Of a stretch of DNA of 64,000 bases, positions 46,403-61,171 are shown one piece after another (within the stretch, counting starts at the first letter, position 1; every line of letters starts with the position of its first letter). The position numbers and the translations under genes are program-made. The stretch spans positions 124,001 through 188,000 of the IMG/VR virus record IMGVR_UViG_3300001782_000005. One strand, 5' to 3'. Under the pieces are notes generated by a model, which searched no databases, was not told the DNA's origin, and was given only the letters and a program-made list of their open reading frames with translations.

Positions 46403-47659
46403 GTGAAAAGAGCAAGATTTTCGAGGCAACCGGTAGCTAAACAGATAACTCCACTCGAACTAAGAATGTTTGGTCTTTCTGAAGATTCAATAAAATTAGT
46501 TGACAAGATAGAAGAATTGAGGTCAGACCCTCCGAATATTGTGATTGCGGAATGTCTGAAAACTGCTCATTTTATTCAAAATAAATTTAAGCAACAAGTT
46601 GTGAAAAAGAAAAGTAAATATGTAATGGGTTTGGGGGTATATGAGCAGTTAAAATTTGAACCAAAGATGAATGCCAAAATATTGAGACCCGCTAAAGTAA
46701 AATTTAAAAACATATATAATCCATATATAGGTCATGATCTTGAAGATGAAACCCTTATAGTATGGAGAACCGGGGGTATCGGCGACCTTTTATTTATCCA
46801 ACCAAACCTAAATTATCTCAAAGAAATATATCCAACTTGTGAAATCATTTTAGCCTGTGGTCCTCAGTATCAAGCAATGGTTGAAGATTGGCCAGCGGTT
46901 GATATGGTTCTTGATCTTCCTTTCCTATTTCAATACTTAATTAGAGCTGATTACCATGCAGTTTTTGAAGGAGTTATCGAAAGATGTAAAGAAGCACAAA
47001 CTACAAATGCATATGAGTTATTTACTAGATGGTTAGGTTTAGATCTCCCAAAAGATAGATTAGTACCTACACAAGATGTAAAACTAGACAAACTTGAAGA
47101 GTGTAAGAAGATTTTGGAAGATGAATGGAACTTAGAAGGGATAGATTTTATTATTATTCAATTAAGGGCTAGTTCTCCAATTAGGTCTCCAAGGTTAGGT
47201 CTTTGGGGAGATATAATAAATCGTTTGACTAAAAATGATCATGTGGTAATAATTACTGATGCACCTCATTATGCAAAAGAAATAGATTTTCTAATTGATA
47301 AATTTATAAAAGATAAAGATCTTGTGTTTAATTTTGCGCATCATTCAAAGAGTTTGGATTATACCATTGCTCTAACTTCATTAGCAAAGATGGCATTATC
47401 TACTGATACTGCTATGATGCACCTTGCTGCTGCTTTAGATATTAAAGGATTTGGACTTTATGGTCCTTTTCCTGGAGAAATAAGACTTACTACATATCCA
47501 AAAAGTCGTTGGATAAATGCTGAGTATCATTGTGCTCCATGTTTTTTACATGGCCATAAACCTTGCCCCGGTGCTGCTGCAGATGGAACTCCAAGATGCT
47601 ATGAGCAAATAAATTTAGATGAACTTATTGAAAGGATTGAGGAGTTGTACAATGATTAA
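46403..47659 (+). CDS. Glycosyltransferase family 9 (heptosyltransferase-like)
   Basis: GGIGDLL, DTAMMHLAAAL, LYGP, CAPC...C. Confidence 0.85.
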   Translation: MKRARFSRQPVAKQITPLELRMFGLSEDSIKLVDKIEELRSDPPNIVIAECLKTAHFIQNKFKQQVVKKKSKYVMGLGVYEQLKFEPKMNAKILRPAKVKFKNIYNPYIGHDLEDETLIVWRTGGIGDLLFIQPNLNYLKEIYPTCEIILACGPQYQAMVEDWPAVDMVLDLPFLFQYLIRADYHAVFEGVIERCKEAQTTNAYELFTRWLGLDLPKDRLVPTQDVKLDKLEECKKILEDEWNLEGIDFIIIQLRASSPIRSPRLGLWGDIINRLTKNDHVVIITDAPHYAKEIDFLIDKFIKDKDLVFNFAHHSKSLDYTIALTSLAKMALSTDTAMMHLAAALDIKGFGLYGPFPGEIRLTTYPKSRWINAEYHCAPCFLHGHKPCPGAAADGTPRCYEQINLDELIERIEELYND

Positions 47660-48482
47660 AATTGCAGTCACTATTCGTAATAGACTTGCAATTACTAAAA
47701 AGTGTATAGCAGCGATTAAAAAGCATTCAAAGATTCCCCACCAGTTATATTTATATAATAATTCAACTAATCATCTAATAAAGGAACATTTTGAATATGC
47801 TTATAATCTCTATAAGAATGGATTAGTAACGCAAATAACCTTCAATACTGATGCTAGTACATATAAGGCATTTAGTAAAGCATCTGCTCTAAATGCTTTT
47901 GGGTTAGCACATGAGCAAGACCCTGCTAAAGATAGTTATCATTTTTTAGTATTTCTTGATAACGATGTTATTGTTGTACCTGGTTGGGACCAAGTTTTTT
48001 ATGAAGGTTGGAAATTTGTTAATAATCAAAAATTGAGTAATATAAAAGTAATTGGCCAATTGCCAGGGGGGATTAAAGAAAGAAAAAATTTGAAAAGTCA
48101 AATTGCAGGATGTACTGCAGCGATGGGAAAGTTAGGCGGGTCTGGACTTTGGACTGTTAGGACAAACTTTTTTAGAGATATTGGATATTTAGATATAAAA
48201 CAATTAGTTGGACATAATAAACGCCATGACCAAATGTATTGGTCTTTAATGAATAGAAAGACTAATGGTAAGGAATATATTTTAGGTATTAGGAAAAAAC
48301 TTGGATACCATTGTGGTCCATTTGCTGGTTCCGTATGCAATATTCTCACGAAGCAAAAGGATAGCAAGATAAGTATGGAGGCAATAAAATTTAAGGAACA
48401 AGAGAAGAAAATCGAAGCAATGTCATTCGATGAATTTTATGAAAAGGTTATTACGGATCCAAGAGTTCAGCGAGGTTGGTAA
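47652..48482 (+). CDS. GT-A (GT2-like) glycosyltransferase
   Basis: RNRL..TKKC, FLDND DxD motif; start at ATG 47652. Confidence 0.75.
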   Translation: MIKIAVTIRNRLAITKKCIAAIKKHSKIPHQLYLYNNSTNHLIKEHFEYAYNLYKNGLVTQITFNTDASTYKAFSKASALNAFGLAHEQDPAKDSYHFLVFLDNDVIVVPGWDQVFYEGWKFVNNQKLSNIKVIGQLPGGIKERKNLKSQIAGCTAAMGKLGGSGLWTVRTNFFRDIGYLDIKQLVGHNKRHDQMYWSLMNRKTNGKEYILGIRKKLGYHCGPFAGSVCNILTKQKDSKISMEAIKFKEQEKKIEAMSFDEFYEKVITDPRVQRGW

Positions 48483-49402
48483 TGCAGAAAGCAGTCTTAA
48501 TGGGTCCTTTCATTGGGGAAATGGGGTGGGAATTGCTGAGGTTTGCTCCAATGCTTCCCTATATGAAGACAAAAAAGTATAAAGGTCAAAATGTAAAATT
48601 TATTGTTTTTACGAGGCCAGAGAGGTTTGACCTGTATGGTGTATGGGCAGACACTCTAGTGCCTCTTCGATTAAAGGGCGATTATCACAATTATAAACCT
48701 GAATGTTTCCGAGCAATAGGTTTTTCAGCTAAAACTTATAATAAACTTGCAGAATCTTTTAGGAAACAATTTTCTGCTAAATATAATATTATAGAACATA
48801 TATATCCAAAGATTACAAAACCTGCATATTTAAATAAGAATCAATATCCACAAAAAATTATGATTTATGATTACCGGCCTAGAAAGTCTAATAGAATTCT
48901 AGTTGGAAAGTATGTACCTAATGATAAACCAGTTGTTGTTTTGGGACCAAGATTTAGGAAGGGTTTCAGAAGAAATTGGCCTCATTGGCAGAAATTCTAT
49001 AGCATACTGTCAGCAAATAGTTGGTTAGTAAATAATTTTCATTTTGTGATTTGTGGAAAGGAACCTGAATATGTCCCGGATGAGCGACAGAGATTTTTCG
49101 ATATTAATAGTATCGAAAGGCATGAAAATAGCTCTCTTATTGGTCTTACTATTGAAACTATAAGAAGGTCAATGCTCGTTGTTGGGTCCCAGTCTGCTAT
49201 ACCAAATGTTGGCATGATATTAAGAGTTGAAGTTTTAGAGTGGGGTAATGAACCAAGAGAACATACAAAAACTTATAATGTCTTTAATACTAAAGTTAAC
49301 TTCATCACTGATAAATTTTATAAAACTCCGCCAGAGGCGATCATTAAAGACATGACGAAAATCCTGAAAAGAAAACTCAAAGAAGGAGCGAAAAATGAAT
49401 GA
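48476..49402 (+). CDS. Putative GT-B fold glycosyltransferase
   Basis: GPFIGEMGWE, RRNWPHW, VVGSQSA; context. Confidence 0.55.
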   Translation: MVMQKAVLMGPFIGEMGWELLRFAPMLPYMKTKKYKGQNVKFIVFTRPERFDLYGVWADTLVPLRLKGDYHNYKPECFRAIGFSAKTYNKLAESFRKQFSAKYNIIEHIYPKITKPAYLNKNQYPQKIMIYDYRPRKSNRILVGKYVPNDKPVVVLGPRFRKGFRRNWPHWQKFYSILSANSWLVNNFHFVICGKEPEYVPDERQRFFDINSIERHENSSLIGLTIETIRRSMLVVGSQSAIPNVGMILRVEVLEWGNEPREHTKTYNVFNTKVNFITDKFYKTPPEAIIKDMTKILKRKLKEGAKNE

Positions 49403-49682
49403 GAATGTTTGGTTAATTTCGAATAGAAAGAAGGTCAAAGCATTACTTCGCCAATTTGAAGAACACCGAATGAAGGGTTCTTATGGAGGAGATATAAATC
49501 TTGGTGAAGCAATCATGCTTACGAGTGGTTTAATAAACGAGATAGAAAGACTGAATAGAGAAAATGTGGAATTAAAGTCGAAACCAGAAGTAGATATTAG
49601 TAAGTTGAAAGCCAAAATTGAAACCCTTGAGATTGAGAATAAACACCTAAAGGGCAAGATATCGACTTTAAAGGGAGAATAA
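49395..49682 (+). CDS. Small coiled-coil protein
   Basis: Heptad-rich C-terminus. Confidence 0.5.
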   Translation: MNENVWLISNRKKVKALLRQFEEHRMKGSYGGDINLGEAIMLTSGLINEIERLNRENVELKSKPEVDISKLKAKIETLEIENKHLKGKISTLKGE

Positions 49683-49683
49683 A

Positions 49684-50436
49684 ATGGCCCTTCCAATTGA
49701 TGCAGTTTACGCAGGGACTAATGCCAAGATAGCAGATGTACAGGCAAAATATAATGATTGTCTTACCTTATTCCCCGATATTCAAACACAATTAGCAATA
49801 GTCTCAGCAAATGTGACAACTATATATAATACTGCTGTTGATATGATCAGTGAAGAATTTAGTACTCTACTAGAGAAATACGGAATTAATTGTGCATCCA
49901 GAGCATATTTTGGTCAAGATGCTGATGACTTAATAACTGATAGATATGACATATTTGAGAAAGCACAAAGCGGTGACATATATAATCCAATTAATGATCA
50001 ACTACAGTATATGCTAGATCAAACAGGACCTTTTGACTGTAGTATACCTGCTATAGAAGCTTGGGTGAGAAGTTTATTTGATAATTTATCTGATAAGACA
50101 GATGACCGTAAAGATCTTATTGATGCAGCAAAACAATTTGTAGATGATGCAAAAGAATTTGTCGATGATGTAAACCGTGCTTTAGGTTTCCTTGGTGAGT
50201 GGATAGGATGTGGAGTACAGATGTTTAATAATTTCTATGATCTTGGACCTGCTATGGAAACTTATAATACATATGCCAATCAAACTTTTACTGCAGTTGA
50301 TAATGCAAAACAAATAACCGATAATCCAACTGAAATTTATAATTTATCAGTAGAGGAAACAAAATCCACTCTAGGTTTACAAACTAGAATGGATAACCTC
50401 AAGAGTGAAGCTAGTTCTATACTAAGTTTATTTTAG
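49684..50436 (+). CDS. Helical hypothetical protein, probably virion-associated
   Basis: Acidic and helical; adjacent to the PAAR gene. Confidence 0.4.
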   Translation: MALPIDAVYAGTNAKIADVQAKYNDCLTLFPDIQTQLAIVSANVTTIYNTAVDMISEEFSTLLEKYGINCASRAYFGQDADDLITDRYDIFEKAQSGDIYNPINDQLQYMLDQTGPFDCSIPAIEAWVRSLFDNLSDKTDDRKDLIDAAKQFVDDAKEFVDDVNRALGFLGEWIGCGVQMFNNFYDLGPAMETYNTYANQTFTAVDNAKQITDNPTEIYNLSVEETKSTLGLQTRMDNLKSEASSILSLF

Positions 50437-50444: not shown

Positions 50445-50747
50445 ATGCCCGGAACAGCATTCCTTACATCAATTGGAGTAGGTACTTGCTGCTGCCACCA
50501 CGATCCGGATTGTAGACCAAAAACTGGTATGATTGTTTCTGGATCTCCGGATAAGATTACGAATGGATTACCAACCGCAAGAATTGGGGACGTATTTTTA
50601 GGAACTTGTGGTCATACTTCTATAATGGCAAGTGGGTCTCCAAATGTGATTACAAATGGAAGGGGTCAATGTAGAATTGGCGATGTTTTTTCCGGCTGTA
50701 TAGTAGGAGTGATTGTTACAGGTTCTCCAGATTCTATCACTAACTAG
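50445..50747 (+). CDS. PAAR-repeat spike-tip protein (T4 gp5.4-like)
   Basis: SGSP....NG.PTARIGD repeats with Cys/His. Confidence 0.85.
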   Translation: MPGTAFLTSIGVGTCCCHHDPDCRPKTGMIVSGSPDKITNGLPTARIGDVFLGTCGHTSIMASGSPNVITNGRGQCRIGDVFSGCIVGVIVTGSPDSITN

Positions 50748-50749: not shown

Positions 50750-50778
50750 AAAAAAAGGGAGGTCAGACCTCCCAATTT
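50750..50778. terminator. Terminator between convergent genes
   Basis: A-tract then GGGAGGT-CAG-ACCTCCC hairpin. Confidence 0.7.
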
Positions 50779-50796: not shown

Positions 50797-51168
50797 TTAC
50801 TTAAGATCGGACGCTGAAACCTTTTCTTTCCTCACGGTATCTAGCTGAACGACCTTGATGGGTTTTGGAGTTGTTCTGAACTTCCCTTTCCTCATATCTA
50901 CCAAATGTTTCCTGACCATCTCGACTTTTGGGTCTTCACTTTCAATGTAATGAATTATGAATACGCCAGTTGTTGATGTACATTTTGGACAGCAGCGGTG
51001 TTCTAGTGCATCATATACTGCGCTACAATTTCCACAAAGTTTTGTATCATCAACTCTAAAGATTACGGAGACAAATGTTTCCTTCTTTTCCATTCTATAA
51101 TCATAGAAACCGGCGAATATGAAGCATCCTAAAGCGAGACCAACAATTAATGCTACAAGAATTTCCAT
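50797..51168 (-). CDS. Membrane-anchored Zn-ribbon protein
   Basis: N-terminal TM; CGNC...CPKC. Confidence 0.55.
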   Translation of the reverse strand: MEILVALIVGLALGCFIFAGFYDYRMEKKETFVSVIFRVDDTKLCGNCSAVYDALEHRCCPKCTSTTGVFIIHYIESEDPKVEMVRKHLVDMRKGKFRTTPKPIKVVQLDTVRKEKVSASDLK

Positions 51169-51406
51169 CTTTATCGACCCCCTTCGATAATTTGGCTAAG
51201 TTCTCCGATGCACTTAACACAGAGACCTGTTTTTCGAAATTTCTCAATTTCGATATTTGTTTGGAATTGGTCAAGAGTAATATTACTTGAGCAGGCCAGG
51301 CATCGACCCTGTTTAATCAAACCATATGTGTCGATGCCTCTTAGAAACATTGCTGACCTAATTGAACTTATGCATCTAACAGTTTTTATTGGATATTTGT
51401 TCTCGG

Positions 51407-51880
51407 TCATATTGGGTACTCCCCTGAGTAATCAAGTTCTAATTTTAACCCACCTTCTTTAGGGACAATTTCGCCTATTCCTTTCTCAACTTCTTTCATT
51501 TGTTTTTTAATTTTTTCCAACTCTTGTTCAAGTTTAGATAAGATCTCCATCTCAACCATACCAAACATTTGTTTATGTTGTTCATAGAGTTCTGGACTTC
51601 GAGCAATTATTTGTATTTGCATCCCTTCAAGAATATCTAATTGGAGTTTGAGGGCTCTTAAATCTTGAGATACTTTAGATGATTGTTTAGCAATAGTGAC
51701 ACTAGAAGAAATAGCTTTATCGGTACCATCTATTACAACTAACATCTGATCTTTAGTTCTTATCATTCCCCAAAGCATCACAATTATAAGCGCCGCAAAT
51801 ATTATGTTGAGAGCGGTTTGGGCACAAAGGAAATTGTATGTAATCTTGAATGGATCCTTTTTGAATTTTTCAGCATGCAT
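51407..51880 (-). CDS. Membrane-anchored coiled-coil protein
   Basis: One TM followed by heptads; GGAGG RBS. Confidence 0.5.
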   Translation of the reverse strand: MHAEKFKKDPFKITYNFLCAQTALNIIFAALIIVMLWGMIRTKDQMLVVIDGTDKAISSSVTIAKQSSKVSQDLRALKLQLDILEGMQIQIIARSPELYEQHKQMFGMVEMEILSKLEQELEKIKKQMKEVEKGIGEIVPKEGGLKLELDYSGEYPI

Positions 51881-52210
51881 TAGTGCCTCCTTTATCTAGC
51901 TTGCTGCTGTAACTGACGTATTTCTTGAGCGCTTAATGCTCGTATCTGCATCACGTGTTCAGTTGGAATAGCCAACCAGAGACTTCGGTGATAGAGGTCC
52001 CCTCCGGGGTTCTCCATGTAACAAAGAGTATATTTTTCCTCTTCAGAAATTTTGAAATAGGGAGTATTGATATTCTGTATTACTGTCATAAATTGAGAAT
52101 CACCTCCTCTTGTATCAGGATTAGGTAACCAGAACTTATAAGTAATATTAAACATCAATACTAAACTTATAACAAATCCTAAAAGTTTTTTACCCACGAT
52201 ATCCTCCTCT

Positions 52211-52699
52211 TTAGTTCATTAAATAGAAACCGATGATTTTCTGGTTATGGATACTTAGGATTATAAACTCAGCAGCAACTTTTCTGTCTTCTGTTCTCTT
52301 TACCAACATCCATTCATGTATCCAAATCAGATTTCCATTATTAAGAGCAAATGAAACTTTGATTCGGTCTCCTTTGTTGAGATTTACATTACTACTTGAT
52401 AGAAACGAGATTCCAGTCCTTGATAGGTCCTCGACAATCATACCATGCTCTTTCCCGAATCCGTCTATCCACGAACCAGGGAGACTCACCTTTTTTCTAT
52501 ACCAAGATCTGGTACAGAAAATTACGTTCCATTTTTCACCACAAGTACAACTAGCTCTAAGTTGCTTATTTAGTTTTCCATTTGTGAGTCTCATATGGTA
52601 TATTCTTGAACATTTAGGACATTCGATTTTAGTACCCCCGGATGGACCAACTGGAATAACCTCATATTCCTGATATGTTTCCAGATTTAGACCATTCAC
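52211..52699 (-). CDS. Zn-ribbon plus PilZ domain protein (putative c-di-GMP receptor)
   Basis: CPKC...CTC; RSWYR (RxxxR) and DLSRTG (DxSxxG). Confidence 0.8.
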   Translation of the reverse strand: MNGLNLETYQEYEVIPVGPSGGTKIECPKCSRIYHMRLTNGKLNKQLRASCTCGEKWNVIFCTRSWYRKKVSLPGSWIDGFGKEHGMIVEDLSRTGISFLSSSNVNLNKGDRIKVSFALNNGNLIWIHEWMLVKRTEDRKVAAEFIILSIHNQKIIGFYLMN

Positions 52700-52904
52700 C
52701 TTAACTCCTCCTTGATTTATCTATTCATATCTTGGCAAAACTTCCTCTGTAAACTCTTTTGCTTTCTTAAAAAGTTCATCTAATGATTCAAAATCTCTTA
52801 TTTCAAAGGTTTTCATATGTGTTACTTTATTAGTATCAACTATCACCTCGACTCTTAATTCTCTTAATATCTCTGCCACCCTCAGGTCTCCTTTCAACTT
52901 AGGG

Positions 52905-53222
52905 TTATTTAGTTTTACTTAATTCTTCGAATTCTTTCCTATATCTCATATAAGTTTGTGGATCGGTTGGCACAAATTTTCCACCCTTAGCTAATCTAGT
53001 CTGCGCTATAGGTAAGATAGCTAGGGCGACGGCTAATCCGAAAGTCTTACTGTTTGCGACCCAGATAACTACTCCAGCTTCTTCGTCTATAACTCGACTT
53101 ATTGTGGTTTCACCATCATGTAAGCTAATTTCAAAAGTTGTGACAGAGTCCGGATTAGCATAACACAGCGCAGAGGAAAGAAATAGAATTATTACTGATA
53201 AAACTAAAATTTTTGTCTTCAT
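52905..53222 (-). CDS. Secreted small protein
   Basis: Signal peptide; AAGGAGG RBS. Confidence 0.55.
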   Translation of the reverse strand: MKTKILVLSVIILFLSSALCYANPDSVTTFEISLHDGETTISRVIDEEAGVVIWVANSKTFGLAVALAILPIAQTRLAKGGKFVPTDPQTYMRYRKEFEELSKTK

Positions 53223-54366: not shown

Positions 54367-55196
54367 GCCTAAAAGTATATAAAGTAGCAGAAATACTAAA
54401 AGATCTTGAAAGTTCTATAGAAGAGAAGAGACCATTTTCTCTAATACGTTTTGGAGATGGTGGTATTAAATTAATTCATTCATACTACTTTCATGATCAT
54501 AAGCAATTATATGCAATCTGTAAGAAAGAAGGATTGCCAGGAGATAGAGTTAAATACATTATTGATTTATGGGCAAGATATGCAAATGAAGCTGATTATA
54601 TAGATTGCCTTGATGTTTATTTTTCAAAGCGTTTCTGGGGTAAGTATAGGAAGGGATTTGTTCAAGCATCTGATAAAACTTTGATGAGAATGAGAATGTG
54701 GAAAGAGTTATATAGTCGTGCAGGATTTGATATTCATAACGCTAAATACTGTAACCCAGAAGTTAATTATTTAATGTGTGTGGTTTTTCCTGGAAAGAAG
54801 ACTATCTTTGAGATAATGAAGGATAAGAAGGTATGTTGTATAACCTCTTGCCCACAAGCTATAAATAAGCTTCCCAATTATAATATTGACGTTATAGAAA
54901 TTGTTGGTCATTATGAGAGGCATTTTGCAAAATCTTTTTCTAAAGTTGTTAGTCTCATTGAAGGTCGTGCAAACCTCTATGATTTTTGGATTGTGGGAGC
55001 TGGAGAATTGGGTAGAATATATTCCGGATTAATCAAGGCTAGAGGAGGGAGAACGATTGATATGGGTTTTGTTATTGATTATTGGCACAATCAAGAAATC
55101 CCATCCCGACTTAATCAATTTATAGATCCCCATCCTCTAGATAAATTAAAGTTAGTATTGACAAAGTATGGGAAACCTTATGCAGAACACCTCTAA
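54363..55196 (+). CDS. GT-D fold (DUF1792-like) glycosyltransferase
   Basis: PFSLIRFGDG, VGAG..G, IDMG. Confidence 0.7.
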   Translation: MSLKVYKVAEILKDLESSIEEKRPFSLIRFGDGGIKLIHSYYFHDHKQLYAICKKEGLPGDRVKYIIDLWARYANEADYIDCLDVYFSKRFWGKYRKGFVQASDKTLMRMRMWKELYSRAGFDIHNAKYCNPEVNYLMCVVFPGKKTIFEIMKDKKVCCITSCPQAINKLPNYNIDVIEIVGHYERHFAKSFSKVVSLIEGRANLYDFWIVGAGELGRIYSGLIKARGGRTIDMGFVIDYWHNQEIPSRLNQFIDPHPLDKLKLVLTKYGKPYAEHL

Positions 55197-55926
55197 GAAA
55201 ATAGATATTACGATGACTAGTGTCCTTCGACCAAGTATAGTCGATGCGACTCTTAGGTCGTTCTGTGAAAAAATGTTGACTGATCGAGATAGATATCGTT
55301 TAATTATCAATATTGATCCAGTCGGTGAAAATATAAAACCAAAAGAAGTAATAAAAGTTTGTGAAAATTACTTTGATGATATTATTTATAATGTGGCTGA
55401 TAAACCATCATTCCCAGCTGCTGTAATATGGACTTGGAGAAAGGCAAGATCTGAGTGGATCTTTCACCTTGAAGATGACTGGAAAGTTTCTCGTGAAGTT
55501 AGCATAAATCATATGATCAACATTCTTAAAAAATATGAAGATATCGCATGCCTTAGACTTCCAAAACACCCCATTCCAAATAAAAGATTAATTATGATGT
55601 TTCGGTCTAGATATAAGTATAATCCCGATGGATTTTATATCGCTGATGATAGAAAAGCACAATTTGGCCTAAATCCGGTTTTGATAAGAGGAACTTTTGT
55701 TAGAAGAGCAGTTCCATTGATGGTTACATCTAAAAATCCTGAAAAACAATTTAGATATGGAAATATAGTAATGAGAGAGTTTATTATGAAATGGAAATAT
55801 GCAATTTATGGAACACCGGGTCAACCTACTCTTGCAATTGATAATGGTTTAGTATGGAGACAGACTCTAGGTTTCAATAAACCTGAACCAGAAGAAGGGC
55901 CATTTTTGGTATGGAAAAAGAAATAA
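55168..55926 (+). CDS. GT-A fold glycosyltransferase
   Basis: TS..RP, FHLEDDW, LNP. Confidence 0.7.
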   Translation: MGNLMQNTSKKIDITMTSVLRPSIVDATLRSFCEKMLTDRDRYRLIINIDPVGENIKPKEVIKVCENYFDDIIYNVADKPSFPAAVIWTWRKARSEWIFHLEDDWKVSREVSINHMINILKKYEDIACLRLPKHPIPNKRLIMMFRSRYKYNPDGFYIADDRKAQFGLNPVLIRGTFVRRAVPLMVTSKNPEKQFRYGNIVMREFIMKWKYAIYGTPGQPTLAIDNGLVWRQTLGFNKPEPEEGPFLVWKKK

Positions 55927-56678
55927 ATTTATTTTGGCAACACAAAGATGGAAATTTTGGAGATGAATTATCTCCTTATATTGTCAGCAAAATATCTGGA
56001 AAAAAAGTTAAGTTTTCTAATAGCCCTACTCCAACAAAAGTTATATATCTAGCTGTAGGTAGTATTCTCCATCATTTAGCTGCTGGAATGAAATGGTGTG
56101 AGATTTGGGGTTCTGGTTTAATGGACCAAAACCATACATTAGTTTCTCCAAAAAAGATTCATGCTGTTAGAGGACCATTAACTAGACAATTCCTAATAAG
56201 ACAAGGGATAGATTGTCCCGCTATTTATGGAGATCCAGCCCTTTTATTACCTCGTTTATTCAATCCAAAAGTTGAGAAGAAATATAGAGTGGGTATAGTT
56301 CCACATTTTATTGATCAGAAAGATAGTTGGATAAAAATTCAGAATGCCAAAGATGATGTTTTGATAATAAATGTTTATGATCCAATCGAAAAAGTTATCA
56401 TAGATATTTTGTCTTGTAAAGCAATTCTTTCTAGTTCTTTGCATGGCCTAATTGTAGCTGATGCGTATGAAATTCCATCGTTATGGATTAAACTATCCGA
56501 CAAGGTAAAGGGAAAGGGTTTTAAATTTAGAGATTATCTCTTATCAATTGGTGTTGAACCCTATAAACCATATTATCCAGCAATCCCATACCAAGACATT
56601 GATGCACCATTAAGATTTGTAAAAAAATATAAACTGAAATTAAATCTGGACAGACTTCTAGAAAGTCACCCCTTTTAA
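55911..56678 (+). CDS. Polysaccharide pyruvyl transferase
   Basis: NFGD.L, GSIL, WGSG, AVRGPLT, GDPALL, SSSLHGLI.ADAY. Confidence 0.88.
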   Translation: MEKEINLFWQHKDGNFGDELSPYIVSKISGKKVKFSNSPTPTKVIYLAVGSILHHLAAGMKWCEIWGSGLMDQNHTLVSPKKIHAVRGPLTRQFLIRQGIDCPAIYGDPALLLPRLFNPKVEKKYRVGIVPHFIDQKDSWIKIQNAKDDVLIINVYDPIEKVIIDILSCKAILSSSLHGLIVADAYEIPSLWIKLSDKVKGKGFKFRDYLLSIGVEPYKPYYPAIPYQDIDAPLRFVKKYKLKLNLDRLLESHPF

Positions 56679-56687: not shown

Positions 56688-57965
56688 ATGAAAGTTATTC
56701 TAATTTATTTACCGCACCCATATTTTAAGCAACCGGATTCACAAGCTCCATTAGGACTCTTATATTTGGGTGCAGTATTGGAGGAAGAGGGAATTGAAGT
56801 GGAGATGAAAAATTATTCAAGTTATTCAAATGAACAGGCAATTGAAGATCTACCTTTTGCTGACATCTATGGCCTTACTACAACTAGTCTTGAATTGCTC
56901 CAAAGTAATAGATTTGCTAAATCTATAAAGGAGAAGTATCCTAATTCAACTGTATTTGTAGGTGGACCCGGAACATATACAGATGAATATATTGATTGGA
57001 AATATATAGATTCAATTTGTAAAGGTGAAGCTGAGCATACAATTTTTGATATGATAAATGATTCTAATAAAGGTGCTCTAAGAAGAATATATAATGGTAA
57101 TTTTATTAAAGATTTAGATTCTCTACCTTTACCTGCCCGCCATTTATTAAAAGACAAACAAGGTGGCAAGATCTTTGCATATGACAGAGATTATAAGGGT
57201 ACAGGGAGTACTGTACTCATGACAAGTAGGGGTTGCCCTTTTAATTGTTCTTTTTGTTCTTCTCCCTGTTTCAATAATCGAGTTGTAAGGTGGCGAACTC
57301 CTGAGAAAGTAGCAGAGGAAGTCAGGCATGTAATAGATAGTTACAATATCCGCCAATTTAGATTTTCAGATGATACGATTACAGTAAATAAAAAGCATTG
57401 TCTAAGAGTAGCCGAATTATTTGGAGAATTAGATGTTGCTTGGAGAATATCAACTCGAGTCAAACCATTTGATTATGATGTCTTTAAAGCGATGCATGAG
57501 GCCGGTTTAAAAGAGATATCTTTTGGAGTTGAGAGTTTTGACGACGATATACTTAAGATATTAAATAAAGGTGCGACTGTTGCTGATAATGTTAGAGCTT
57601 TAGAATTGTCTGATAAAATTGGAATAAAAGCAAGAATCTTAATGATGATCGGAACGCCAGGGCAGACAAGAAAAACTATTGAGAGAAATAAATACTGGAT
57701 TCCGAAAGTTCCATTTAATATGGTTGCTTGTAAAAGATTTGTTCCAATGCCCGGGAGCGACATTTGGAATAATCCTGATCATTATAACATTGAAATTCTA
57801 AATAGAAATTTAGATGATTATAATTTCTATTTCTTCGGCCCGGAAGGAATGAATGAACATATTGATTTTATCAGACTTAAAGATAGGAATATGGATGAAG
57901 TCAATAAAGAAAATTTAGAGTTTTTAGACTTTTTAGATGAAACTGGAAAATTAAATAAGGGGTAA
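56688..57965 (+). CDS. Cobalamin-binding radical SAM enzyme (class B methyltransferase-like)
   Basis: PLGLLYL, VGGP, GEAE; SRGCPFNCSFC; GVES. Confidence 0.9.
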   Translation: MKVILIYLPHPYFKQPDSQAPLGLLYLGAVLEEEGIEVEMKNYSSYSNEQAIEDLPFADIYGLTTTSLELLQSNRFAKSIKEKYPNSTVFVGGPGTYTDEYIDWKYIDSICKGEAEHTIFDMINDSNKGALRRIYNGNFIKDLDSLPLPARHLLKDKQGGKIFAYDRDYKGTGSTVLMTSRGCPFNCSFCSSPCFNNRVVRWRTPEKVAEEVRHVIDSYNIRQFRFSDDTITVNKKHCLRVAELFGELDVAWRISTRVKPFDYDVFKAMHEAGLKEISFGVESFDDDILKILNKGATVADNVRALELSDKIGIKARILMMIGTPGQTRKTIERNKYWIPKVPFNMVACKRFVPMPGSDIWNNPDHYNIEILNRNLDDYNFYFFGPEGMNEHIDFIRLKDRNMDEVNKENLEFLDFLDETGKLNKG

Positions 57966-57969
57966 AAGT

Positions 57970-58662
57970 ATGATACTCAAAGAGAGTCAAGAGCAGCGAG
58001 ATGGAGAACTTTCTAAATTGACTGGGATCTCTATAGATATAATTAGGAAACTCGATATAACAAAACCTAGATGTGGTTATGAAGAACCAGAAACCGAGAA
58101 TGGATATATAGAACTTTACTCAAAGGACTATGGATTGAAAACTGTTGAGTATATGAGAATCCTAATGTGTACTAGTATTAACGCGAGAGATGAGGAGCTT
58201 TATCAACTTATAAATAGAACTTCAGGAAAGAAGTGTCTTGATTTTGGTTGTGGAGTTGGAACTCATGCAATTGCTTTGTTAGAGAGAGGTAATGATGTTT
58301 CAATTTTAGATGTGCCTAGTCCACTTTTGGATCTAACTGTAAAAAGAGCTGCTTTAAGAAAGTTGTCGTTTGAGAAGGTTTATTCTAATGATGATAAACT
58401 CCCAAATTCTAAATTTGATATAGTTATATGTACTAACGTCCTCGAGCATGTATATGATCCAATTAGAGAAGTAGATAGGATAACTAAAAGCCTAAGGAAA
58501 CATGGAGAATTACATTTAGTTGTTAGTAACAAAATCAAACCATCTTCTGGGCATTTCAGAAGAACTGTTGAGATGTGGAGAAAAGAAGGTAGTGCTTTTA
58601 TGAAGAAATATTATGTTAAAAAGGGAAAAACTATGTATCAGAAGAGAAAAAGGCCACTATGA
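57970..58662 (+). CDS. Class I SAM-dependent methyltransferase
   Basis: LDFGCGVG, FDIVIC..VLEH. Confidence 0.85.
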   Translation: MILKESQEQRDGELSKLTGISIDIIRKLDITKPRCGYEEPETENGYIELYSKDYGLKTVEYMRILMCTSINARDEELYQLINRTSGKKCLDFGCGVGTHAIALLERGNDVSILDVPSPLLDLTVKRAALRKLSFEKVYSNDDKLPNSKFDIVICTNVLEHVYDPIREVDRITKSLRKHGELHLVVSNKIKPSSGHFRRTVEMWRKEGSAFMKKYYVKKGKTMYQKRKRPL

Positions 58663-59246
58663 AAAAATTGAAGAACATTCCAGTTATTGCTAAATGGACT
58701 CATTGGAGAGTTGCAGAAGAATTGAAACATCATAAACCTTCGACAGTTATTGATATGGGAGGGGTCGGGAGATTAGGAAAACTTACATCTTTTAAGGTGA
58801 CAGATGCTAATATAAAACAAGGGATAGATGCAACCAATATGCCATTTGAAGATAAGTCATTTGACGCATCTGTTTCTATTAATACACTTGAGCATGTGAA
58901 ACTTAAGAAGAATTTTCTTCTTGAGGCTATCAGAGTAGCAAGGATTGTATCAATACATGAATTCCCATTTGGTCCACATGCTAGGCAGGTTGAGGAACTA
59001 AAAGAAAAATTAGGCCATAAGCATCCTTGTAAACTTCCAAATTATCGAGACCATATTTTACCTTTTATGACTAATTCATCATTAGATTGTAAATTTAAAC
59101 CTGCCATGAGTTGTCAAATTTGCCTTTTATTGTTAGCATCTATGAATGAAAAAATGAATGTGAATGAGACATTTGAACTTGCTAGATCATGTGGGAGTGC
59201 ACCATATAGCTATATATTAGTTATAAAATCGAAAGGTGAGAAATGA
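58659..59246 (+). CDS. Class I SAM-dependent methyltransferase (type 11-like)
   Basis: IDMGG, DA..MPF.D.SFD.....TLEH, EA.RV. Confidence 0.8.
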   Translation: MKKLKNIPVIAKWTHWRVAEELKHHKPSTVIDMGGVGRLGKLTSFKVTDANIKQGIDATNMPFEDKSFDASVSINTLEHVKLKKNFLLEAIRVARIVSIHEFPFGPHARQVEELKEKLGHKHPCKLPNYRDHILPFMTNSSLDCKFKPAMSCQICLLLLASMNEKMNVNETFELARSCGSAPYSYILVIKSKGEK

Positions 59247-60127
59247 GAATCTTATATTTTTCGGACGGTTATTCATGGAATGTAATGGGAGTTAAGCGCT
59301 CAATTTCTGAAGAATTGCAAAGGAAAGGTCATGATGTTATTTATTTGGATAAAGGTTTGATATGGAAGATTTCGGACTTTATATTTGAGTATGATCCAGA
59401 TCAGATATGGTTAGCACATACAGGTTTATTTTTCTCAAATGAGGTTAGAAAGAAAATAAAGAAACCAATTATCGGTTTTGGTTTTAGTGATCCCTATTAC
59501 ACACAGTTGTATCCAGAGAAATATGACGTTTATATAACTAATCATTATAAAACTTACCTTAGTCTTAAAGATAAAATAAAGTGTATTTATAACCCGCCTT
59601 CATGCGATTTTAAATTTCACCAAAAATTAAACCTTCAAAAAACAGTCGATCTTTCAATGATTGGTACAGCAGTACATTCCCGCTTTAAAAATCAAAAATT
59701 AAGAATAGAGACAATCAACAAACTTAGAAAAGATACTAACTGGATTATTGTAGCATATGGAAAGAAATGGCCTAAAAACTTGAGAAATCGTGGCCATATT
59801 GAAGGTCAAGAATTTTTGGTTGCTATAAATAGTACAAAGTTAGGTCTGGATCCAGTCGAGAAACGCTTCATTTTAACAAGAAGGATATTTGAGTTTTCTG
59901 CTTGTGGAGTACCTATTATAACCAGACATAGAGAAGAACCATTACTACATTTTGAAAAAGACAAAGAAATTCTTACTTATCATAACTACGATGACCTTTT
60001 GGAACAAGTAAATTATTATCTTAGTAACTCATCTGAGTTAGAACAAATAGGTACAAGAGCATTAGAGAGGTGTGTGAGAGACCATAATATAAGTAATAGG
60101 GTTGATCACATATTGGCAGAACTTTAA
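59243..60127 (+). CDS. CgeB-like GT-B glycosyltransferase
   Basis: DP motif; R.FE..ACG; F..DKEI; H....R. Confidence 0.8.
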   Translation: MRILYFSDGYSWNVMGVKRSISEELQRKGHDVIYLDKGLIWKISDFIFEYDPDQIWLAHTGLFFSNEVRKKIKKPIIGFGFSDPYYTQLYPEKYDVYITNHYKTYLSLKDKIKCIYNPPSCDFKFHQKLNLQKTVDLSMIGTAVHSRFKNQKLRIETINKLRKDTNWIIVAYGKKWPKNLRNRGHIEGQEFLVAINSTKLGLDPVEKRFILTRRIFEFSACGVPIITRHREEPLLHFEKDKEILTYHNYDDLLEQVNYYLSNSSELEQIGTRALERCVRDHNISNRVDHILAEL

Positions 60128-60139
60128 CGAGGATGGTAA

Positions 60140-61171
60140 ATGAGTAAAAACTTTTGGTTGTTCAGAACAAATTTGAGGCCATTAGAGTATTACCATCAAT
60201 ATAAGAGTTTAGAGAATTTTGAAAAGAATTGCCACGATTTTTATTTATTAATGGGCGTTTGGTTTCTGAGAAATAGAATATATGATAATTTTATAATATG
60301 GAGGTTGAATCCGAAGAGACAGAAATTGGAAGATATAGTTTTCGATATAGATGGTAAGAAATTTATTCAGAGATGGGTAAATAGTTTTAACGAAGTATTC
60401 AAATATGACCCACCAAAAATCTCCTTTTTTCGAGGAGGATTCCCCGAGTACTGTCAGATTACAAATTCCAACCCGGGTTATCTAGGTAAGAAATTATATC
60501 TTGGAGCTGGTAGGAGAGTCTATCCTCAACATGGAGGAAAGTATGACTTAGTACTCCTAGAAGACGAAGAAGATCAAAGAACTGACTATAAAACAGCTCC
60601 GTTTTATAAAACTGCTAATAGTGAAATATTTAAACCCCTTGATATGCCAAAAAAATATAACCTATGTTGGATTTGTAATTTTGTACAGATAAGACATAAG
60701 GGTCAAGAATTCTTTATAAATGAGGTTTCGAAATCATCTCATCTTAAGCAATTAGCTATTGTTCATGTAGGAAATAAATCCGAAGATGGCCGAAAGATGT
60801 GTAGGAAATATGGAGTTAATAATATTGAATTTGCTGGTTGGGTTGAAAGACCAATTCTAAATGAGTATTTGAATTCTAGCTATTTCGGTATAGTAACATC
60901 AAATGAAGTTGATGGATGTCCAAGAGTTATAACTGAAGTAATGATGTCCGGCACTCCTCTATTACTAAGAAAACGAACCCGTCTTTTAAGTTTCTATAAG
61001 AAATCTGGAATTATAATATTTGATGATAAAAGTTTAAAAGTTAAATTACAACATGGTATGTATAAATACGATGAGTATAAGAATCAAGCGAAAAAAAATA
61101 TTGAGGAGAGAATATCTATGAGTAAAGTTTGTAATATGAACTTAAATATATGGAGTAATTCAAAAAAATGA
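60140..61171 (+). CDS. GT4-like glycosyltransferase
   Basis: HKG, F.GW, DGCPRVITE..MSGTP. Confidence 0.75.
   Translation: MSKNFWLFRTNLRPLEYYHQYKSLENFEKNCHDFYLLMGVWFLRNRIYDNFIIWRLNPKRQKLEDIVFDIDGKKFIQRWVNSFNEVFKYDPPKISFFRGGFPEYCQITNSNPGYLGKKLYLGAGRRVYPQHGGKYDLVLLEDEEDQRTDYKTAPFYKTANSEIFKPLDMPKKYNLCWICNFVQIRHKGQEFFINEVSKSSHLKQLAIVHVGNKSEDGRKMCRKYGVNNIEFAGWVERPILNEYLNSSYFGIVTSNEVDGCPRVITEVMMSGTPLLLRKRTRLLSFYKKSGIIIFDDKSLKVKLQHGMYKYDEYKNQAKKNIEERISMSKVCNMNLNIWSNSKK

What the first reader, a model, noticed from the sequence alone, without database searches (positions are those of the whole stretch)
46403..61171. Phage-encoded glycan assembly and decoration pathway (12 enzymes), co-oriented with virion genes
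Seen: two plus-strand blocks (46.4-49.4 kb and 53.4-61.2 kb) encode about eight glycosyltransferases of three folds (GT9, GT-A, GT4/CgeB-like GT-B, GT-D), a pyruvyl transferase, two SAM methyltransferases and a B12-binding radical SAM enzyme. Many genes overlap their neighbours. No flippase, Wzy, undecaprenyl-phosphate initiating transferase or TM-rich gene is present. Known: single phage GTs modify DNA or host O-antigen, while multi-GT pathways for virion glycans are best known from giant eukaryotic viruses and a few actinophages. Inference: this is a cytoplasmic, lipid-carrier-independent pathway building a pyruvylated, methylated oligosaccharide, most plausibly on virion proteins (the PAAR gene is in the same unit as block 1 and block 2 follows a late-type GAACAAA motif). 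DNA hypermodification is the alternative.
Basis: partly seen in the sequence, partly recalled or inferred. Interest (0 to 1): 0.85.

Follow-up and report, generated by a model that had tools for sequence, protein, structure and literature searches.

The report
Jumbo-phage glycan-building gene island
An uncultivated sediment jumbo phage, and a large clade of its relatives, carries a membrane-free set of sugar-adding enzymes: a conserved core followed by a rapidly swapped set of decorating enzymes, most likely coating a phage or cell-surface molecule with a strain-specific glycan.

Summary
All 12 ORFs exist at the stated coordinates. Nine pass Pfam gathering scores. One (48476-49402) is a GT9-like GT-B by AlphaFold and Foldseek. 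Two (47619-48482, 55168-55926) are GT-A only by look-alike leads and motifs. That gives eight glycosyltransferases, a pyruvyl transferase, a B12 radical SAM enzyme and two methyltransferases, none with a membrane segment.

It is not an assembly chimera or a host locus. The window lies in a 277-kb IMG/VR phage contig, and the same layout recurs in more than 80 metagenomic loci, including 248-kb and 255-kb contigs.

In relatives the two blocks are contiguous: GT9, GT-A, GT9-like, a small protein, a GT9-like paralog, GT4, GT-D and GT-A (about 45-58% identity). A hypervariable 5-12 kb decoration region follows, then a GT4 and QueC.

The window's decoration cassette has syntenic bacterial counterparts in polysaccharide loci (35-59% identity).

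The acceptor is unresolved. Virion-protein glycosylation is my best reading (about 0.42). DNA glycosylation is unlikely. The "late GAACAAA motif" and the link to virion genes are weak.

The parts
46403..47659 (+). GT9-family GT-B glycosyltransferase with a ~116-aa beta-rich N-terminal extension and four invariant C-terminal cysteines (C377, C380, C388, C399). Core gene of the clade.
   Evidence: Pfam PF01075. Profile vs PDB: WaaF 2.7e-10. AF2 pLDDT 91.8. Foldseek: WaaF 3e-14, TibC 6e-10. 642 homologs, 53-58% identical across the clade. Invariant Cys.
47619..48482 (+). Probable GT-A (GT2-like) glycosyltransferase with an invariant DND motif. The start is more likely M12 (47652). Core gene.
   Evidence: No Pfam or PDB sequence hit. 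ESM-Atlas look-alikes are viral GT2 clusters. D114, N115 and D116 invariant in 18 sequences.
48476..49402 (+). GT-B glycosyltransferase, structurally GT9-like, with no recognisable sequence family. Core gene. Relatives carry a second paralog two genes downstream.
   Evidence: AF2 pLDDT 93.6. Foldseek: 3tov, WaaC and WaaF, E 6e-10 to 3e-8. Paralogy by hhalign, probability 100%.
49395..49682 (+). Small (95 aa) helical or coiled-coil protein, conserved in position but weakly in sequence. Role unknown.
   Evidence: Alignment of 14 homologs. Only sub-threshold coiled-coil Pfam hits.
49684..50436 (+). Acidic 250-aa protein (net charge -23), specific to the window's subclade. It occupies the slot of the second GT9-like paralog and precedes PAAR.
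   Evidence: No Pfam or PHROG hit. Unrelated to the paralog. Found only in L007 and L011.
50445..50747 (+). PAAR-repeat protein (spike-tip type). Last gene of plus-strand unit 1.
   Evidence: Pfam PF05488 at 35.5 bits and PHROG 281. PAAR also lies inside the cluster in L019 and L054.
50757..50773 (.). GC-rich hairpin followed by a T-run, between convergent genes. Terminator-like end of unit 1.
50797..53222 (-). Six small minus-strand genes (one PilZ-domain protein, several with one or two hydrophobic segments). A subclade-specific insertion that splits the cluster; not part of the pathway.
   Evidence: Absent from distant relatives, where the two blocks are contiguous.
53301..53314 (-). Copy of the 14-bp motif CTATATATATTAAT at the head of the minus-strand insertion (promoter-like).
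   Evidence: 5 exact copies, all on the minus strand, vs 0.27 expected.
53371..54366 (+). GT4-type GT-B glycosyltransferase with an E-x7-E motif. Core gene (50 of 56 loci have it directly upstream of the GT-D gene).
   Evidence: Pfam PF13692 and PF00534. Motif. Neighbour statistics.
54363..55196 (+). GT-D-like glycosyltransferase. Core gene, used as the marker for the clade.
   Evidence: Pfam PF22882 at 38.1 bits. NCBIfam NF040628 below its cut-off. 150 metagenomic relatives. 761 representative clusters. 1 hit in 185,579 genomes.
55168..55926 (+). Probable GT-A glycosyltransferase with an invariant H-x-EDD motif. Semi-conserved last gene of the core (25 of 55 loci directly after GT-D).
55911..56678 (+). 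Polysaccharide pyruvyl transferase. First gene of the variable decoration cassette.
   Evidence: Pfam PF04230 at 45.5 bits. Bacterial ortholog 34.6% identical in L093.
56688..57965 (+). Cobalamin-binding (class B) radical SAM enzyme, CxxxCxxC at residues 183-190. Probably C-methylates or otherwise modifies a sugar.
   Evidence: Pfam. No NCBIfam equivalog cut-off reached. Motif. 55-60% identical bacterial homologs, always beside methyltransferase, CgeB-like GT and pyruvyl transferase genes.
57970..58662 (+). Class I SAM methyltransferase.
   Evidence: Pfam. 46.8% identical to the L093 partner.
58659..59246 (+). Short (195 aa) methyltransferase-like protein.
   Evidence: Partial Methyltransf_11 hit. 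37.5% identical over full length to the L093 partner.
59243..60127 (+). CgeB-like GT-B glycosyltransferase (Glyco_trans_1_2).
   Evidence: Pfam, 5.6e-26. 44.5% identical to the L093 partner.
60140..61171 (+). GT4-type glycosyltransferase that closes the island. Conserved at the distal end in relatives.
   Evidence: Pfam. 50-51% identical in L039 and L073, 82% in L011. Same position in L091.
61166..61198 (.). 14-bp-stem hairpin with a T-run. Terminator-like end of unit 2.
62671..63270 (+). QueC homolog. Conserved downstream flank of the island, not part of the pathway.
   Evidence: Pfam PF06508, 3.4e-29. Same position in the 248-kb relative.

Best explanation
This is a self-contained viral glycosylation system that works in the cytoplasm with soluble enzymes. 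A conserved set of seven or eight glycosyltransferases builds a conserved inner oligosaccharide on an acceptor shared by the whole phage clade. The set comprises a GT9 enzyme with an extra N-terminal domain and a Cys4 finger, a GT-A, one or two GT9-like GT-B enzymes, a GT4, a GT-D-like enzyme and a second GT-A. A replaceable downstream cassette then adds and decorates outer sugars. In this phage the cassette holds a pyruvyl transferase, a B12 radical SAM enzyme, two SAM methyltransferases, a CgeB-like GT and a closing GT4. The result would be a pyruvylated (anionic) and methylated glycan that differs between related phages. I infer that the acceptor is most likely one or more phage structural proteins, so that virions carry a strain-specific glycan coat, as in chloroviruses and mimiviruses. 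Shown: the enzyme families, their conservation, the core/variable architecture, the absence of membrane steps, and the bacterial origin of the cassette. Inferred: the order of action, the donor sugars and the acceptor.
For: The enzyme set is real. The core genes are conserved at about 45-58% identity, in fixed order, in more than 80 loci including 248-kb and 255-kb contigs. That level is similar to the neighbouring backbone genes (actin-like 59-70%, w406 about 54%). The core enzymes have essentially no cellular counterparts (1 hit in 185,579 genomes; none in GenBank phages). This fits long-standing viral genes acting on a virus-conserved acceptor. Positions downstream of the core carry 11-22 different gene families among 28-55 loci. 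These include sulfotransferases, acetyltransferases, a deacetylase, epimerases/dehydratases, a UDP-GlcNAc 2-epimerase and a CMP-sugar synthetase. This conserved-core, variable-periphery pattern matches chlorovirus capsid N-glycans (PMC9614988). No TM-rich protein occurs in 842 genes of 82 loci. The GT9 enzyme has a beta-rich N-terminal extension and four invariant C-terminal cysteines, an arrangement that parallels the protein heptosyltransferase TibC. TibC is among its Foldseek matches, with the longest aligned spans. The only characterised GT-D enzyme and CgeB both act on proteinaceous surfaces (my own knowledge). A PAAR gene, preceded by an acidic protein, lies inside the cluster in at least three divergent lineages.
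Against: No acceptor has been identified. No capsid, tail-tube or fibre gene was recognised next to the cluster: PHROGs and Pfam are blank for the upstream genes, and w704 reads as a helical, charged protein rather than a fibre. By sequence the GT9 enzyme is closer to LPS heptosyltransferase WaaF (2.7e-10) than to TibC, which gives no hit. The Foldseek alignments to TibC have 10-13 A rmsd, so the resemblance is one of architecture only. In bacteria the decoration cassette lies in polysaccharide or LPS-type loci. Most of the enzymes are strongly basic, which would also suit a membrane or nucleic-acid acceptor.
Confidence: 0.42

Rival explanations
1. The phage remodels the host envelope. The core enzymes (three GT9-like plus a GT4, as in WaaC/WaaF/WaaQ/WaaG) build a phage-specified core oligosaccharide on lipid A-Kdo, or on another lipid, at the inner face of the membrane. 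The host's MsbA and Lpt machinery exports it. This changes the surface of the infected cell, for example to block superinfection or to stop progeny re-adsorbing.
For: GT9 membership and best matches to WaaF and WaaC. A second GT9-like fold. GT4 enzymes with E-x7-E. LPS-core enzymes are peripheral and lack TM helices, so the absence of TM genes fits equally well. The enzymes are basic. In a Pirellulaceae genome the cassette's bacterial counterpart sits next to a canonical GT9 gene and an MsbA-like ABC transporter. Bacterial-host markers are present: Amidase_2, SLT and PilZ.
Against: The core genes have no close cellular homologs and are fixed clade-wide. That is unlike host-derived surface-conversion genes, which are usually sporadic and host-like. 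No integrase or lysogeny gene was seen in the window, and replacing the outer-membrane LPS is slow for a lytic cycle (inference). The GT9 enzyme carries an N-terminal domain and a Cys4 finger that WaaF lacks: the alignment to WaaF residue 3 starts at about residue 117 of the phage protein. It is also mildly acidic. No Kdo transferase or lipid A gene was seen in the window.
Confidence: 0.25
2. The glycan is built on some other soluble acceptor. Candidates are a non-structural phage or host protein (for example the actin-like filament encoded just upstream), or a small molecule or free oligosaccharide.
For: All enzymes are soluble. Synteny with the actin-like gene and the NUDIX gene is tight and conserved. 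No acceptor has been identified.
Against: A hypervariable outer decoration is typical of exposed surface glycans under diversifying selection, not of intracellular modifications. No biosynthetic scaffold genes for a small-molecule aglycone were seen.
Confidence: 0.2
3. DNA hypermodification: the enzymes glycosylate a modified base in the phage DNA to evade restriction.
For: Phages are known to attach diverse glycans to 5hmC, with GT-A and GT-B enzymes and sometimes second GTs (bioRxiv 10.1101/2023.12.21.572611). A QueC gene (7-deazaguanine pathway) is the conserved downstream neighbour. The enzymes are basic.
Against: Pfam scans of the window found no thymidylate-synthase-like hydroxymethylase, TET/JBP dioxygenase or C5 cytosine methyltransferase. 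That paper reports that DNA-hypermodification genes usually cluster with such enzymes. Eight or more GTs plus sulfation, pyruvylation, nucleotide-sugar synthesis and CMP-ulosonic acid genes far exceed any known DNA glycan. The best structural matches are LPS and protein GTs, not T4 beta-GT. The cassette is shared with bacterial polysaccharide loci.
Confidence: 0.06
4. Artefact: a host LPS/EPS locus joined to phage DNA by misassembly.
For: The decoration cassette has syntenic bacterial counterparts.
Against: Identical sequence in contigs from three IMG/VR datasets, across both junctions. The same layout occurs in relatives at 84-88% and at about 50% identity. GC is uniform at 0.32-0.37 across cluster and flanks, against 0.586 for the bacterial locus. 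Identity to the bacterial genes is only 35-59%.
Confidence: 0.01

Closest known systems
Chlorovirus (PBCV-1 and relatives) autonomous capsid glycosylation
   Same: Virus-encoded soluble GTs and methyltransferases. The glycan has a conserved core and virus-specific outer substitutions (PMC9614988), mirroring the conserved-core and variable-cassette gene layout found here. Independent of the usual membrane-bound cellular pathway.
   Different: Eukaryotic algal virus; the genes are scattered rather than in one array; different GT families; the acceptor (major capsid protein) is known there and unknown here.
Mimivirus / Megavirinae fibril glycan gene clusters
   Same: Clustered viral genes for bacterial-like sugars, with clade-specific content (PMC10117803). 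The products include a pyruvylated GlcNAc polymer and a methylated sugar (PMC9614988). This window encodes a pyruvyl transferase and methyltransferases.
   Different: Giant eukaryotic viruses. No GT9, GT-D or B12 radical SAM enzymes are reported there, to my knowledge.
Mycobacteriophage virion glycosylation (Freeman et al. 2023, as cited in PMC12619734)
   Same: Phage-encoded GTs put glycans on virion proteins (C-termini of capsid and tail-tube subunits).
   Different: To my knowledge a few genes next to structural genes in small actinophages. Here there are 12 to about 27 genes, a clade-wide core and no recognised structural neighbour.
LPS inner-core assembly (WaaC, WaaF, WaaQ as GT9; WaaG as GT4)
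   Same: The same enzyme families and the best sequence and structure matches. Peripheral enzymes without TM helices. No Wzx/Wzy needed.
   Different: The phage GT9 has an extra N-terminal domain and a Cys4 finger. GT-D and GT-A enzymes sit in the core set. No Kdo or lipid A genes. The core enzymes lack cellular orthologs.
Bacterial autotransporter heptosyltransferases (TibC/AAH)
   Same: A GT9-related GT-B preceded by an N-terminal beta domain of about 100 aa, with a four-cysteine metal finger near the C-terminus. Cytoplasmic protein O-glycosylation.
   Different: No detectable sequence similarity. Different Cys spacing (x2, x7, x10 vs x2, x15, x11). High rmsd in Foldseek. Oligomeric state unknown.
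Phage DNA glycosylation (T-even glucosyltransferases; 5mYOX/ThyS-linked GTs)
   Same: Phage-encoded soluble GT-A and GT-B enzymes.
   Different: No base-hydroxymethylating partner in the window. Far larger enzyme set. Sugar-decorating and nucleotide-sugar genes typical of surface glycans.
Core glycosyltransferase orthogroups of 'moraphages' (large aquatic phages)
   Same: Large uncultivated phages in which four putative GT orthogroups belong to the core genome (PMC12619734).
   Different: The relationship to this clade was not tested. That paper does not describe a core-plus-variable island.

Membership tests
CAZy GT9 / Pfam PF01075 (heptosyltransferase family), for ORF 46403 | Significant match to the family profile | tested here: met
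   PF01075 at 31.1 bits vs cut-off 22. Clade profile vs WaaF sequence 2.7e-10. All NCBIfam equivalog cut-offs are missed, so it is not an ortholog of WaaC, WaaF or WaaQ.
CAZy GT9 / Pfam PF01075, for ORF 46403 | GT-B fold closest to solved GT9 structures | tested here: met
   AF2 pLDDT 91.8. Foldseek: 1psw 2.8e-14, 3tov, WaaC.
CAZy GT9 / Pfam PF01075, for ORF 46403 | ADP-heptose donor and Kdo/heptose-lipid A acceptor | not testable with these tools
   Needs enzymology.
BAHT protein heptosyltransferases (TibC/AAH), for ORF 46403 | N-terminal beta-barrel domain before the catalytic domain | tested here: inconclusive
   The model has five strands in residues 46-96, and the catalytic domain starts at about 117. 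TibC alignments span 420-453 columns but at 10-13 A rmsd.
BAHT protein heptosyltransferases (TibC/AAH), for ORF 46403 | Four-cysteine iron finger inserted near the C-terminus | tested here: inconclusive
   C377, C380, C388 and C399 are invariant in 64 sequences. The spacing differs from TibC's C339, C342, C358 and C370. The metal and any homology are unknown.
BAHT protein heptosyltransferases (TibC/AAH), for ORF 46403 | Sequence similarity to TibC/AAH | tested here: not met
   No TibC hit at E up to 10 with either the single sequence or the profile.
GT-D fold (DUF1792-type), for ORF 54363 | Match to the GT-D profile | tested here: met
   PF22882 at 38.1 bits vs 27, in two stretches. NCBIfam NF040628 at 34.9 vs cut-off 75, not reached.
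GT-D fold (DUF1792-type), for ORF 54363 | Similarity to the solved GT-D structure or its metal-binding motif | tested here: not met
   The profile of 35 sequences finds no GT-D chain in the PDB sequences.
Class B (cobalamin-dependent) radical SAM, for ORF 56688 | CxxxCxxC cluster motif plus an N-terminal B12-binding domain | tested here: met
   Motif at 183-190. PF04055 at 89.4 bits and PF02310 at 36.8 bits, both above cut-off. No NCBIfam subfamily cut-off is reached, so the reaction type is unassigned.
Polysaccharide pyruvyl transferase (PF04230), for ORF 55911 | Match to the family profile | tested here: met
   45.5 bits vs 25.3, but only profile positions 123-277 are matched. No NCBIfam hit.
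Wzx/Wzy- or ABC-transporter-dependent polysaccharide pathway | Polyprenyl-phosphate initiating transferase, flippase, polymerase or permease in the locus | tested here: not met
   No protein with more than 2 TM-like segments among the 12 enzymes or among 842 genes in 82 related loci. Pfam annotations of relatives show none.
Phage DNA glycosylation pathway | Neighbouring enzyme that makes the hydroxymethylated base (ThyA-like hydroxymethylase, or C5-MT plus TET/JBP) | tested here: not met
   Not among the Pfam hits for the ORFs of this 64-kb window. The remaining 213 kb of the genome was not examined.
Phage virion glycosylation (mycobacteriophage type) | GT genes adjacent to capsid or tail genes, and glycan detected on virion proteins | tested here: inconclusive
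   Only PAAR and a language-model lead to a gp15-like tail terminator for ORF 42463. The profile search vs PDB was negative. The glycan itself cannot be tested here.

The most novel reading that the evidence does not exclude
A large, globally distributed clade of uncultivated sediment jumbo phages carries its own cytoplasmic glycosylation machinery. It has a virus-specific conserved core of seven or eight glycosyltransferases, one of them a TibC-like protein-directed GT9, and a hypervariable cassette region borrowed from bacterial polysaccharide loci. Together these coat virions with strain-specific sulfated, pyruvylated or methylated glycans. This would be the bacterial-virus counterpart of the chlorovirus and mimivirus glycan systems, and by far the most complex virion glycosylation known in phages.
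Probability: 0.35. Interest if true: 0.8.

Novelty: new variant of a known kind. Interest (0 to 1): 0.6.

Why it matters
If the glycan goes on virions, tailed phages would join giant eukaryotic viruses in making complex surface glycans of their own, with a conserved core and swappable outer parts. That bears on phage adsorption, particle stability and stickiness in sediments, and evasion of host or grazer recognition. If it goes on lipid A instead, it would be the largest known phage programme for rewriting a host's surface. Either way the locus offers several things. It contains GT families with no cellular orthologs, including a GT9-like fold that sequence searches cannot see. It provides a recurring cassette (pyruvyl transferase, B12 radical SAM, two methyltransferases, CgeB-like GT) shared by phages and bacteria, whose product is unknown. 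It also gives a marker gene set for tracing this phage clade in metagenomes.

Tried and rejected
- Megablast of the whole region, and tblastn of the rSAM, GT9, GT-D, w406 and w704 proteins, against 50,697 GenBank phage records: no match. No annotated relative could be used.
- Single-sequence and profile searches of the three unannotated enzymes, and of w406, against PDB sequences: nothing usable. The GT-D profile also found no solved GT-D chain.
- PHROGs on ten unannotated ORFs of plus-strand unit 1 and its flank: only PAAR was recognised. I could not show that unit 1 is a virion module.
- I tested whether the 250-aa protein at 49684 is a diverged copy of the GT9-like paralog, or of the acidic repeat protein (c44) that precedes PAAR in other lineages. 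It is neither.
- I tested the idea that same-frame neighbours (Pyr/rSAM, CgeB/GT4b) are one protein read through a stop. Rejected: each second gene has its own ribosome-binding site, and the bacterial orthologs are separate genes.
- GAACAAA as a late promoter: the heptamer is enriched (28 vs 15.7 expected), but most copies are intragenic. The few intergenic copies include two in the replication module.
- Archaeal (Thorarchaeota) host, suggested by the label on one MAG. Rejected as probable mis-binning, because the clade encodes a peptidoglycan amidase, an SLT and a PilZ protein.
- tRNA scan: none.

Full report
**What is in the sequence.** The finding covers two plus-strand gene blocks, 46403-49402 and 53371-61171, in an AT-rich region of uniform composition (GC 0.32-0.37). 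Nine of the twelve ORFs pass Pfam's curated thresholds:
- a GT9 enzyme (46403)
- two Glyco_trans_1_4 / GT4-type enzymes (53371, 60140)
- a GT-D-like protein (54363)
- a polysaccharide pyruvyl transferase (55911)
- a B12-binding radical SAM enzyme (56688), with a canonical CxxxCxxC motif at residues 183-190
- two SAM methyltransferases (57970, and a short one at 58659)
- a CgeB-like Glyco_trans_1_2 enzyme (59243)

**The three unannotated ORFs.** Three ORFs have no Pfam, NCBIfam or PDB sequence match.
- For 48476-49402 I built a 43-sequence alignment from related loci. The AlphaFold2 model has pLDDT 93.6. Its best solved neighbours are GT9 heptosyltransferases (3tov, WaaC, WaaF; E 6e-10 to 3e-8). 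It is a GT-B enzyme of GT9-like shape that sequence methods cannot see.
- For 47619-48482 and 55168-55926 the evidence is weaker. The protein-atlas look-alikes are viral GT2 clusters. Each has an invariant acidic motif, DND and H-x-EDD respectively.

No enzyme has a hydrophobic segment. Where neighbours share a frame (Pyr/rSAM, CgeB/GT4b), a TAA stop is followed by a Shine-Dalgarno sequence and ATG, so they are separate genes.

**Origin, and whether it is an artefact.** The window is part of a 277-kb IMG/VR contig. The same sequence is present in two further IMG/VR contigs of 142 and 224 kb. The minus strand of the window carries a T4-like replication set: UvsX, class II RNR, clamp loader, Dda helicase and primase, plus a baseplate-hub-like gene. 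A peptidoglycan amidase is also present. This is a jumbo phage of a bacterium. No GenBank phage record matches the DNA or the core proteins.
- the junctions are identical in the three contigs
- relatives at 84-88% and at about 50% protein identity have the same layout
- the GT-D marker has one hit in 185,579 species-representative genomes
- GC does not change across the edges

**Comparative anatomy.**
- *Recurrence of the clade.* The GT9 protein has 642 detectable homologs. The best 120 are 52-90% identical, and all come from metagenomes. A scan with the GT-D alignment returned 150 confirmed metagenomic loci, of which 80 were kept.
- *Conserved order.* Clustering the ORFs of these loci shows a conserved order: w704, w203, w406, NUDIX, w157, an actin-like gene, one to three small genes, then GT9, GT-A, GT9-like, a protein of about 90 aa, a GT9-like paralog, GT4, GT-D, GT-A, a variable region, GT4 and QueC.
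In the window's subclade, the second GT9-like paralog (paralogy at hhalign probability 100%) is replaced by an unrelated acidic 250-aa protein, a PAAR gene and six small minus-strand genes.
- *Core versus variable.* GT4 lies directly upstream of GT-D in 50 of 56 loci. The six positions downstream hold 11 to 22 different gene families among 28-55 loci.
- *Content of the variable region.* It holds sulfotransferases of three Pfam families, hexapeptide acetyltransferases, a PIG-L deacetylase, FkbM and other methyltransferases, NAD epimerases/dehydratases, GFO/IDH/MocA oxidoreductases, a UDP-GlcNAc 2-epimerase, GT2 and GT1 enzymes, a CMP-sugar synthetase and a papain-like protease.
- *Size of the island.* In the 248-kb relative the array from GT9 to the closing GT4 is about 19 kb and 27 genes, followed by QueC and MazG as in the window. 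The window's twelve enzymes are thus one allele of a clade-wide island with a conserved core and a hypervariable periphery.

**The decoration cassette.** The radical SAM enzyme has 55-60% identical homologs in bacterial MAGs (Pirellulaceae, Planctomycetota, Desulfobacteraceae). In a Pirellulaceae contig (GC 0.586) five of the window's cassette genes lie within about 5 kb. Their identities to the window proteins are: rSAM 59%, 230-aa methyltransferase 47%, 194-aa methyltransferase 37.5%, CgeB-like GT 44.5% and pyruvyl transferase 34.6%. The block sits beside a canonical 346-aa GT9 gene and an MsbA-like ABC transporter. Two other bacterial contigs hold the same set inside large polysaccharide loci with NeuB, CMP-transferase, DegT, GT2, GT4 and GT9 genes. 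This ties the radical SAM enzyme to sugar chemistry. Sugar C-methylation by cobalamin radical SAM enzymes has precedent in GenK (PMC4039129). It also shows that the variable part is exchanged with bacteria as a functional module. Between the window and its 88% relative the flanks are 78-88% identical, but rSAM is 57% and MT1 37%. This indicates allele replacement, as in O-antigen loci.

**What is absent.**
- No protein with more than two hydrophobic segments exists among 842 genes in 82 loci. There is no Wzx, Wzy, ABC permease or polyprenyl-phosphate transferase.
- Pfam scans of the window's ORFs found no thymidylate-synthase-like hydroxymethylase, TET/JBP dioxygenase or cytosine methyltransferase.

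**The acceptor: evidence for a virion protein.**
- The core enzymes behave like old viral genes with no cellular orthologs. That fits an acceptor conserved within the virus.
- The conserved-core, variable-outer pattern is the one described for chlorovirus capsid N-glycans. Mimivirus fibrils carry a pyruvylated and a methylated polysaccharide (PMC9614988; PMC10117803).
- The GT9 enzyme has an N-terminal extension of about 116 aa that is rich in beta-strands, and four invariant cysteines near its C-terminus. The protein heptosyltransferase TibC has an N-terminal beta-barrel and a four-cysteine iron finger (PMC4358343). TibC appears among the Foldseek matches with the longest aligned spans.
- A PAAR gene preceded by an acidic protein sits inside the cluster in several divergent lineages.

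**The acceptor: evidence against a virion protein.**
- There is no sequence similarity to TibC, whereas WaaF is matched at 2.7e-10.
- The structural alignment to TibC has 10-13 A rmsd.
- No capsid, tube or fibre gene is recognisable nearby.

**The acceptor: rivals.**
LPS-core synthesis uses exactly such peripheral GT9 and GT4 enzymes and needs no flippase gene of its own. The bacterial context of the cassette and the basic charge of most enzymes suit it. I rank it lower for two reasons. Surface-conversion genes are usually sporadic and host-like. For a lytic cycle, replacing the outer-membrane LPS is slow (inference).
- *DNA glycosylation.* This is unlikely for the reasons given above, although the conserved QueC neighbour shows the phage probably modifies its DNA in another way.

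- PAAR is co-transcribed in orientation with block 1, and a terminator-like hairpin follows it. That part holds, but in most relatives no PAAR is present.
- The GAACAAA heptamer is enriched in the window (28 vs 15.7) and lies 34 nt before 53371. Similar intergenic copies precede genes of the replication module, so nothing marks it as late.
- A much clearer signal is a 14-bp motif, CTATATATATTAAT. It is present five times, always on the minus strand at the head of minus-strand units, against 0.27 expected. The plus-strand glycan units lack it, so they belong to a different, still undefined, promoter class.
- 'Lipid-carrier-independent' should be narrowed to 'independent of polyprenyl-phosphate carriers and of Wzx/Wzy'.

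**Comparison and verdict.** The system works like the autonomous glycosylation machineries of chloroviruses and mimiviruses, and like the much smaller virion-glycosylation operons of mycobacteriophages (as cited in PMC12619734). Its enzyme families are those of LPS-core and bacterial surface-glycan synthesis. GT9-like proteins occur in other uncultured phages, cyanophages and giant viruses. A 128-kb element with three GT-D-like genes and a still larger sugar island shows the theme is wider. A paper on 'moraphages' notes four core GT orthogroups in large aquatic phages. I found no description of this clade's core-plus-variable island in four literature searches. I rate it a new variant of a known kind. 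It is real, conserved and unusually large, but its target is open.

Noticed in passing
window 44701-45804 (+): A phage-encoded actin-family protein with a very strong match to Pfam Volactin (1.8e-70), a family named after an archaeal cell-shape actin. It is conserved at 52-87% identity (mostly 59-70%) across the clade, a few genes upstream of GT9.
   Followed up: partly
window 1136-1149, 11727-11740, 38506-38519, 53301-53314, 62577-62590 (all - strand): The exact 14-bp motif CTATATATATTAAT occurs five times against 0.27 expected. Each copy sits at the head of a minus-strand transcription unit, so it is probably a phage promoter class. The plus-strand glycan units lack it.
   Followed up: partly
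window 62671-63270 (+); L091 19501-20172: A QueC homolog (3.4e-29) is the conserved downstream neighbour of the glycan island, followed by MazG in a 248-kb relative. This suggests 7-deazaguanine DNA modification. No DpdA, QueD or QueE was seen in the window.
   Followed up: partly
window 50797-53222 (-): A subclade-specific insertion of six small genes splits the glycan cluster. One is a PilZ-domain (c-di-GMP-binding type) protein at 52211-52699, and four have one or two hydrophobic segments.
   Followed up: partly
L013 360-1469, L019 6760-7527, L021 347-976, L054 1518-2612: Highly acidic proteins with a variable number of ~20-aa repeats (S-L-x-x-x-L-Q-N-L-x-G-x-x-S-E-R-D type), conserved Cys and a His-rich motif. 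They lie inside the GT cluster in four lineages; in L019 and L054 a PAAR gene follows directly. They have the same position as the unrelated acidic 250-aa protein of the window.
   Followed up: partly
L008 / L092 (NCBI GCA_048882605.1, contig JBHLRM010000001.1, 255,557 bp): A syntenic 255-kb relative is deposited as contig 1 of a 'Candidatus Thorarchaeota' MAG. The clade encodes a peptidoglycan amidase, an SLT and a PilZ protein, so this looks like a phage contig mis-binned into an archaeal genome.
   Followed up: partly
L003 17269-17676 (-), about 1.3 kb past the window's end; L003 17754-18958 (+): A small protein with a type IV pilin N-terminal methylation motif, and two SLOG-family (YspA / LOG-like) proteins, lie just beyond the window.
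   Followed up: no
L008 8216-9031, L009 7172-7981, and cluster c20 members in L016, L037, L039, L044, L059, L073: NUMOD3-type homing-endonuclease-like genes are inserted at different positions in and around the GT cluster in different relatives.
   Followed up: no
L091 16299-17228; L069 9975-10904: A papain-family (C1) cysteine protease is conserved near the distal end of the island, just before the closing GT4, in several relatives. It is absent from the window.
   Followed up: no
window 42463-43683 (+): This conserved 406-aa protein has language-model look-alikes that include T4 gp15-type tail sheath terminators (score 0.88). This is a lead only; a profile search against PDB sequences was negative.
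   Followed up: partly
L096 (JGI Ga0366832_1000077, 128,683 bp): A different large element carries three GT-D-like genes in a sugar island of more than 20 kb, with DegT, ATP-grasp, Asn-synthase-like, TylF and epimerase genes, again with no membrane component annotated.
   Followed up: no
window 53360-53370, 56677-56687, 45802-45812 and other gene starts: Strong Shine-Dalgarno sequences (GGAG / AGGAGG) precede many genes. This argues against a Bacteroidota host, which typically lacks them (my own knowledge).
   Followed up: no
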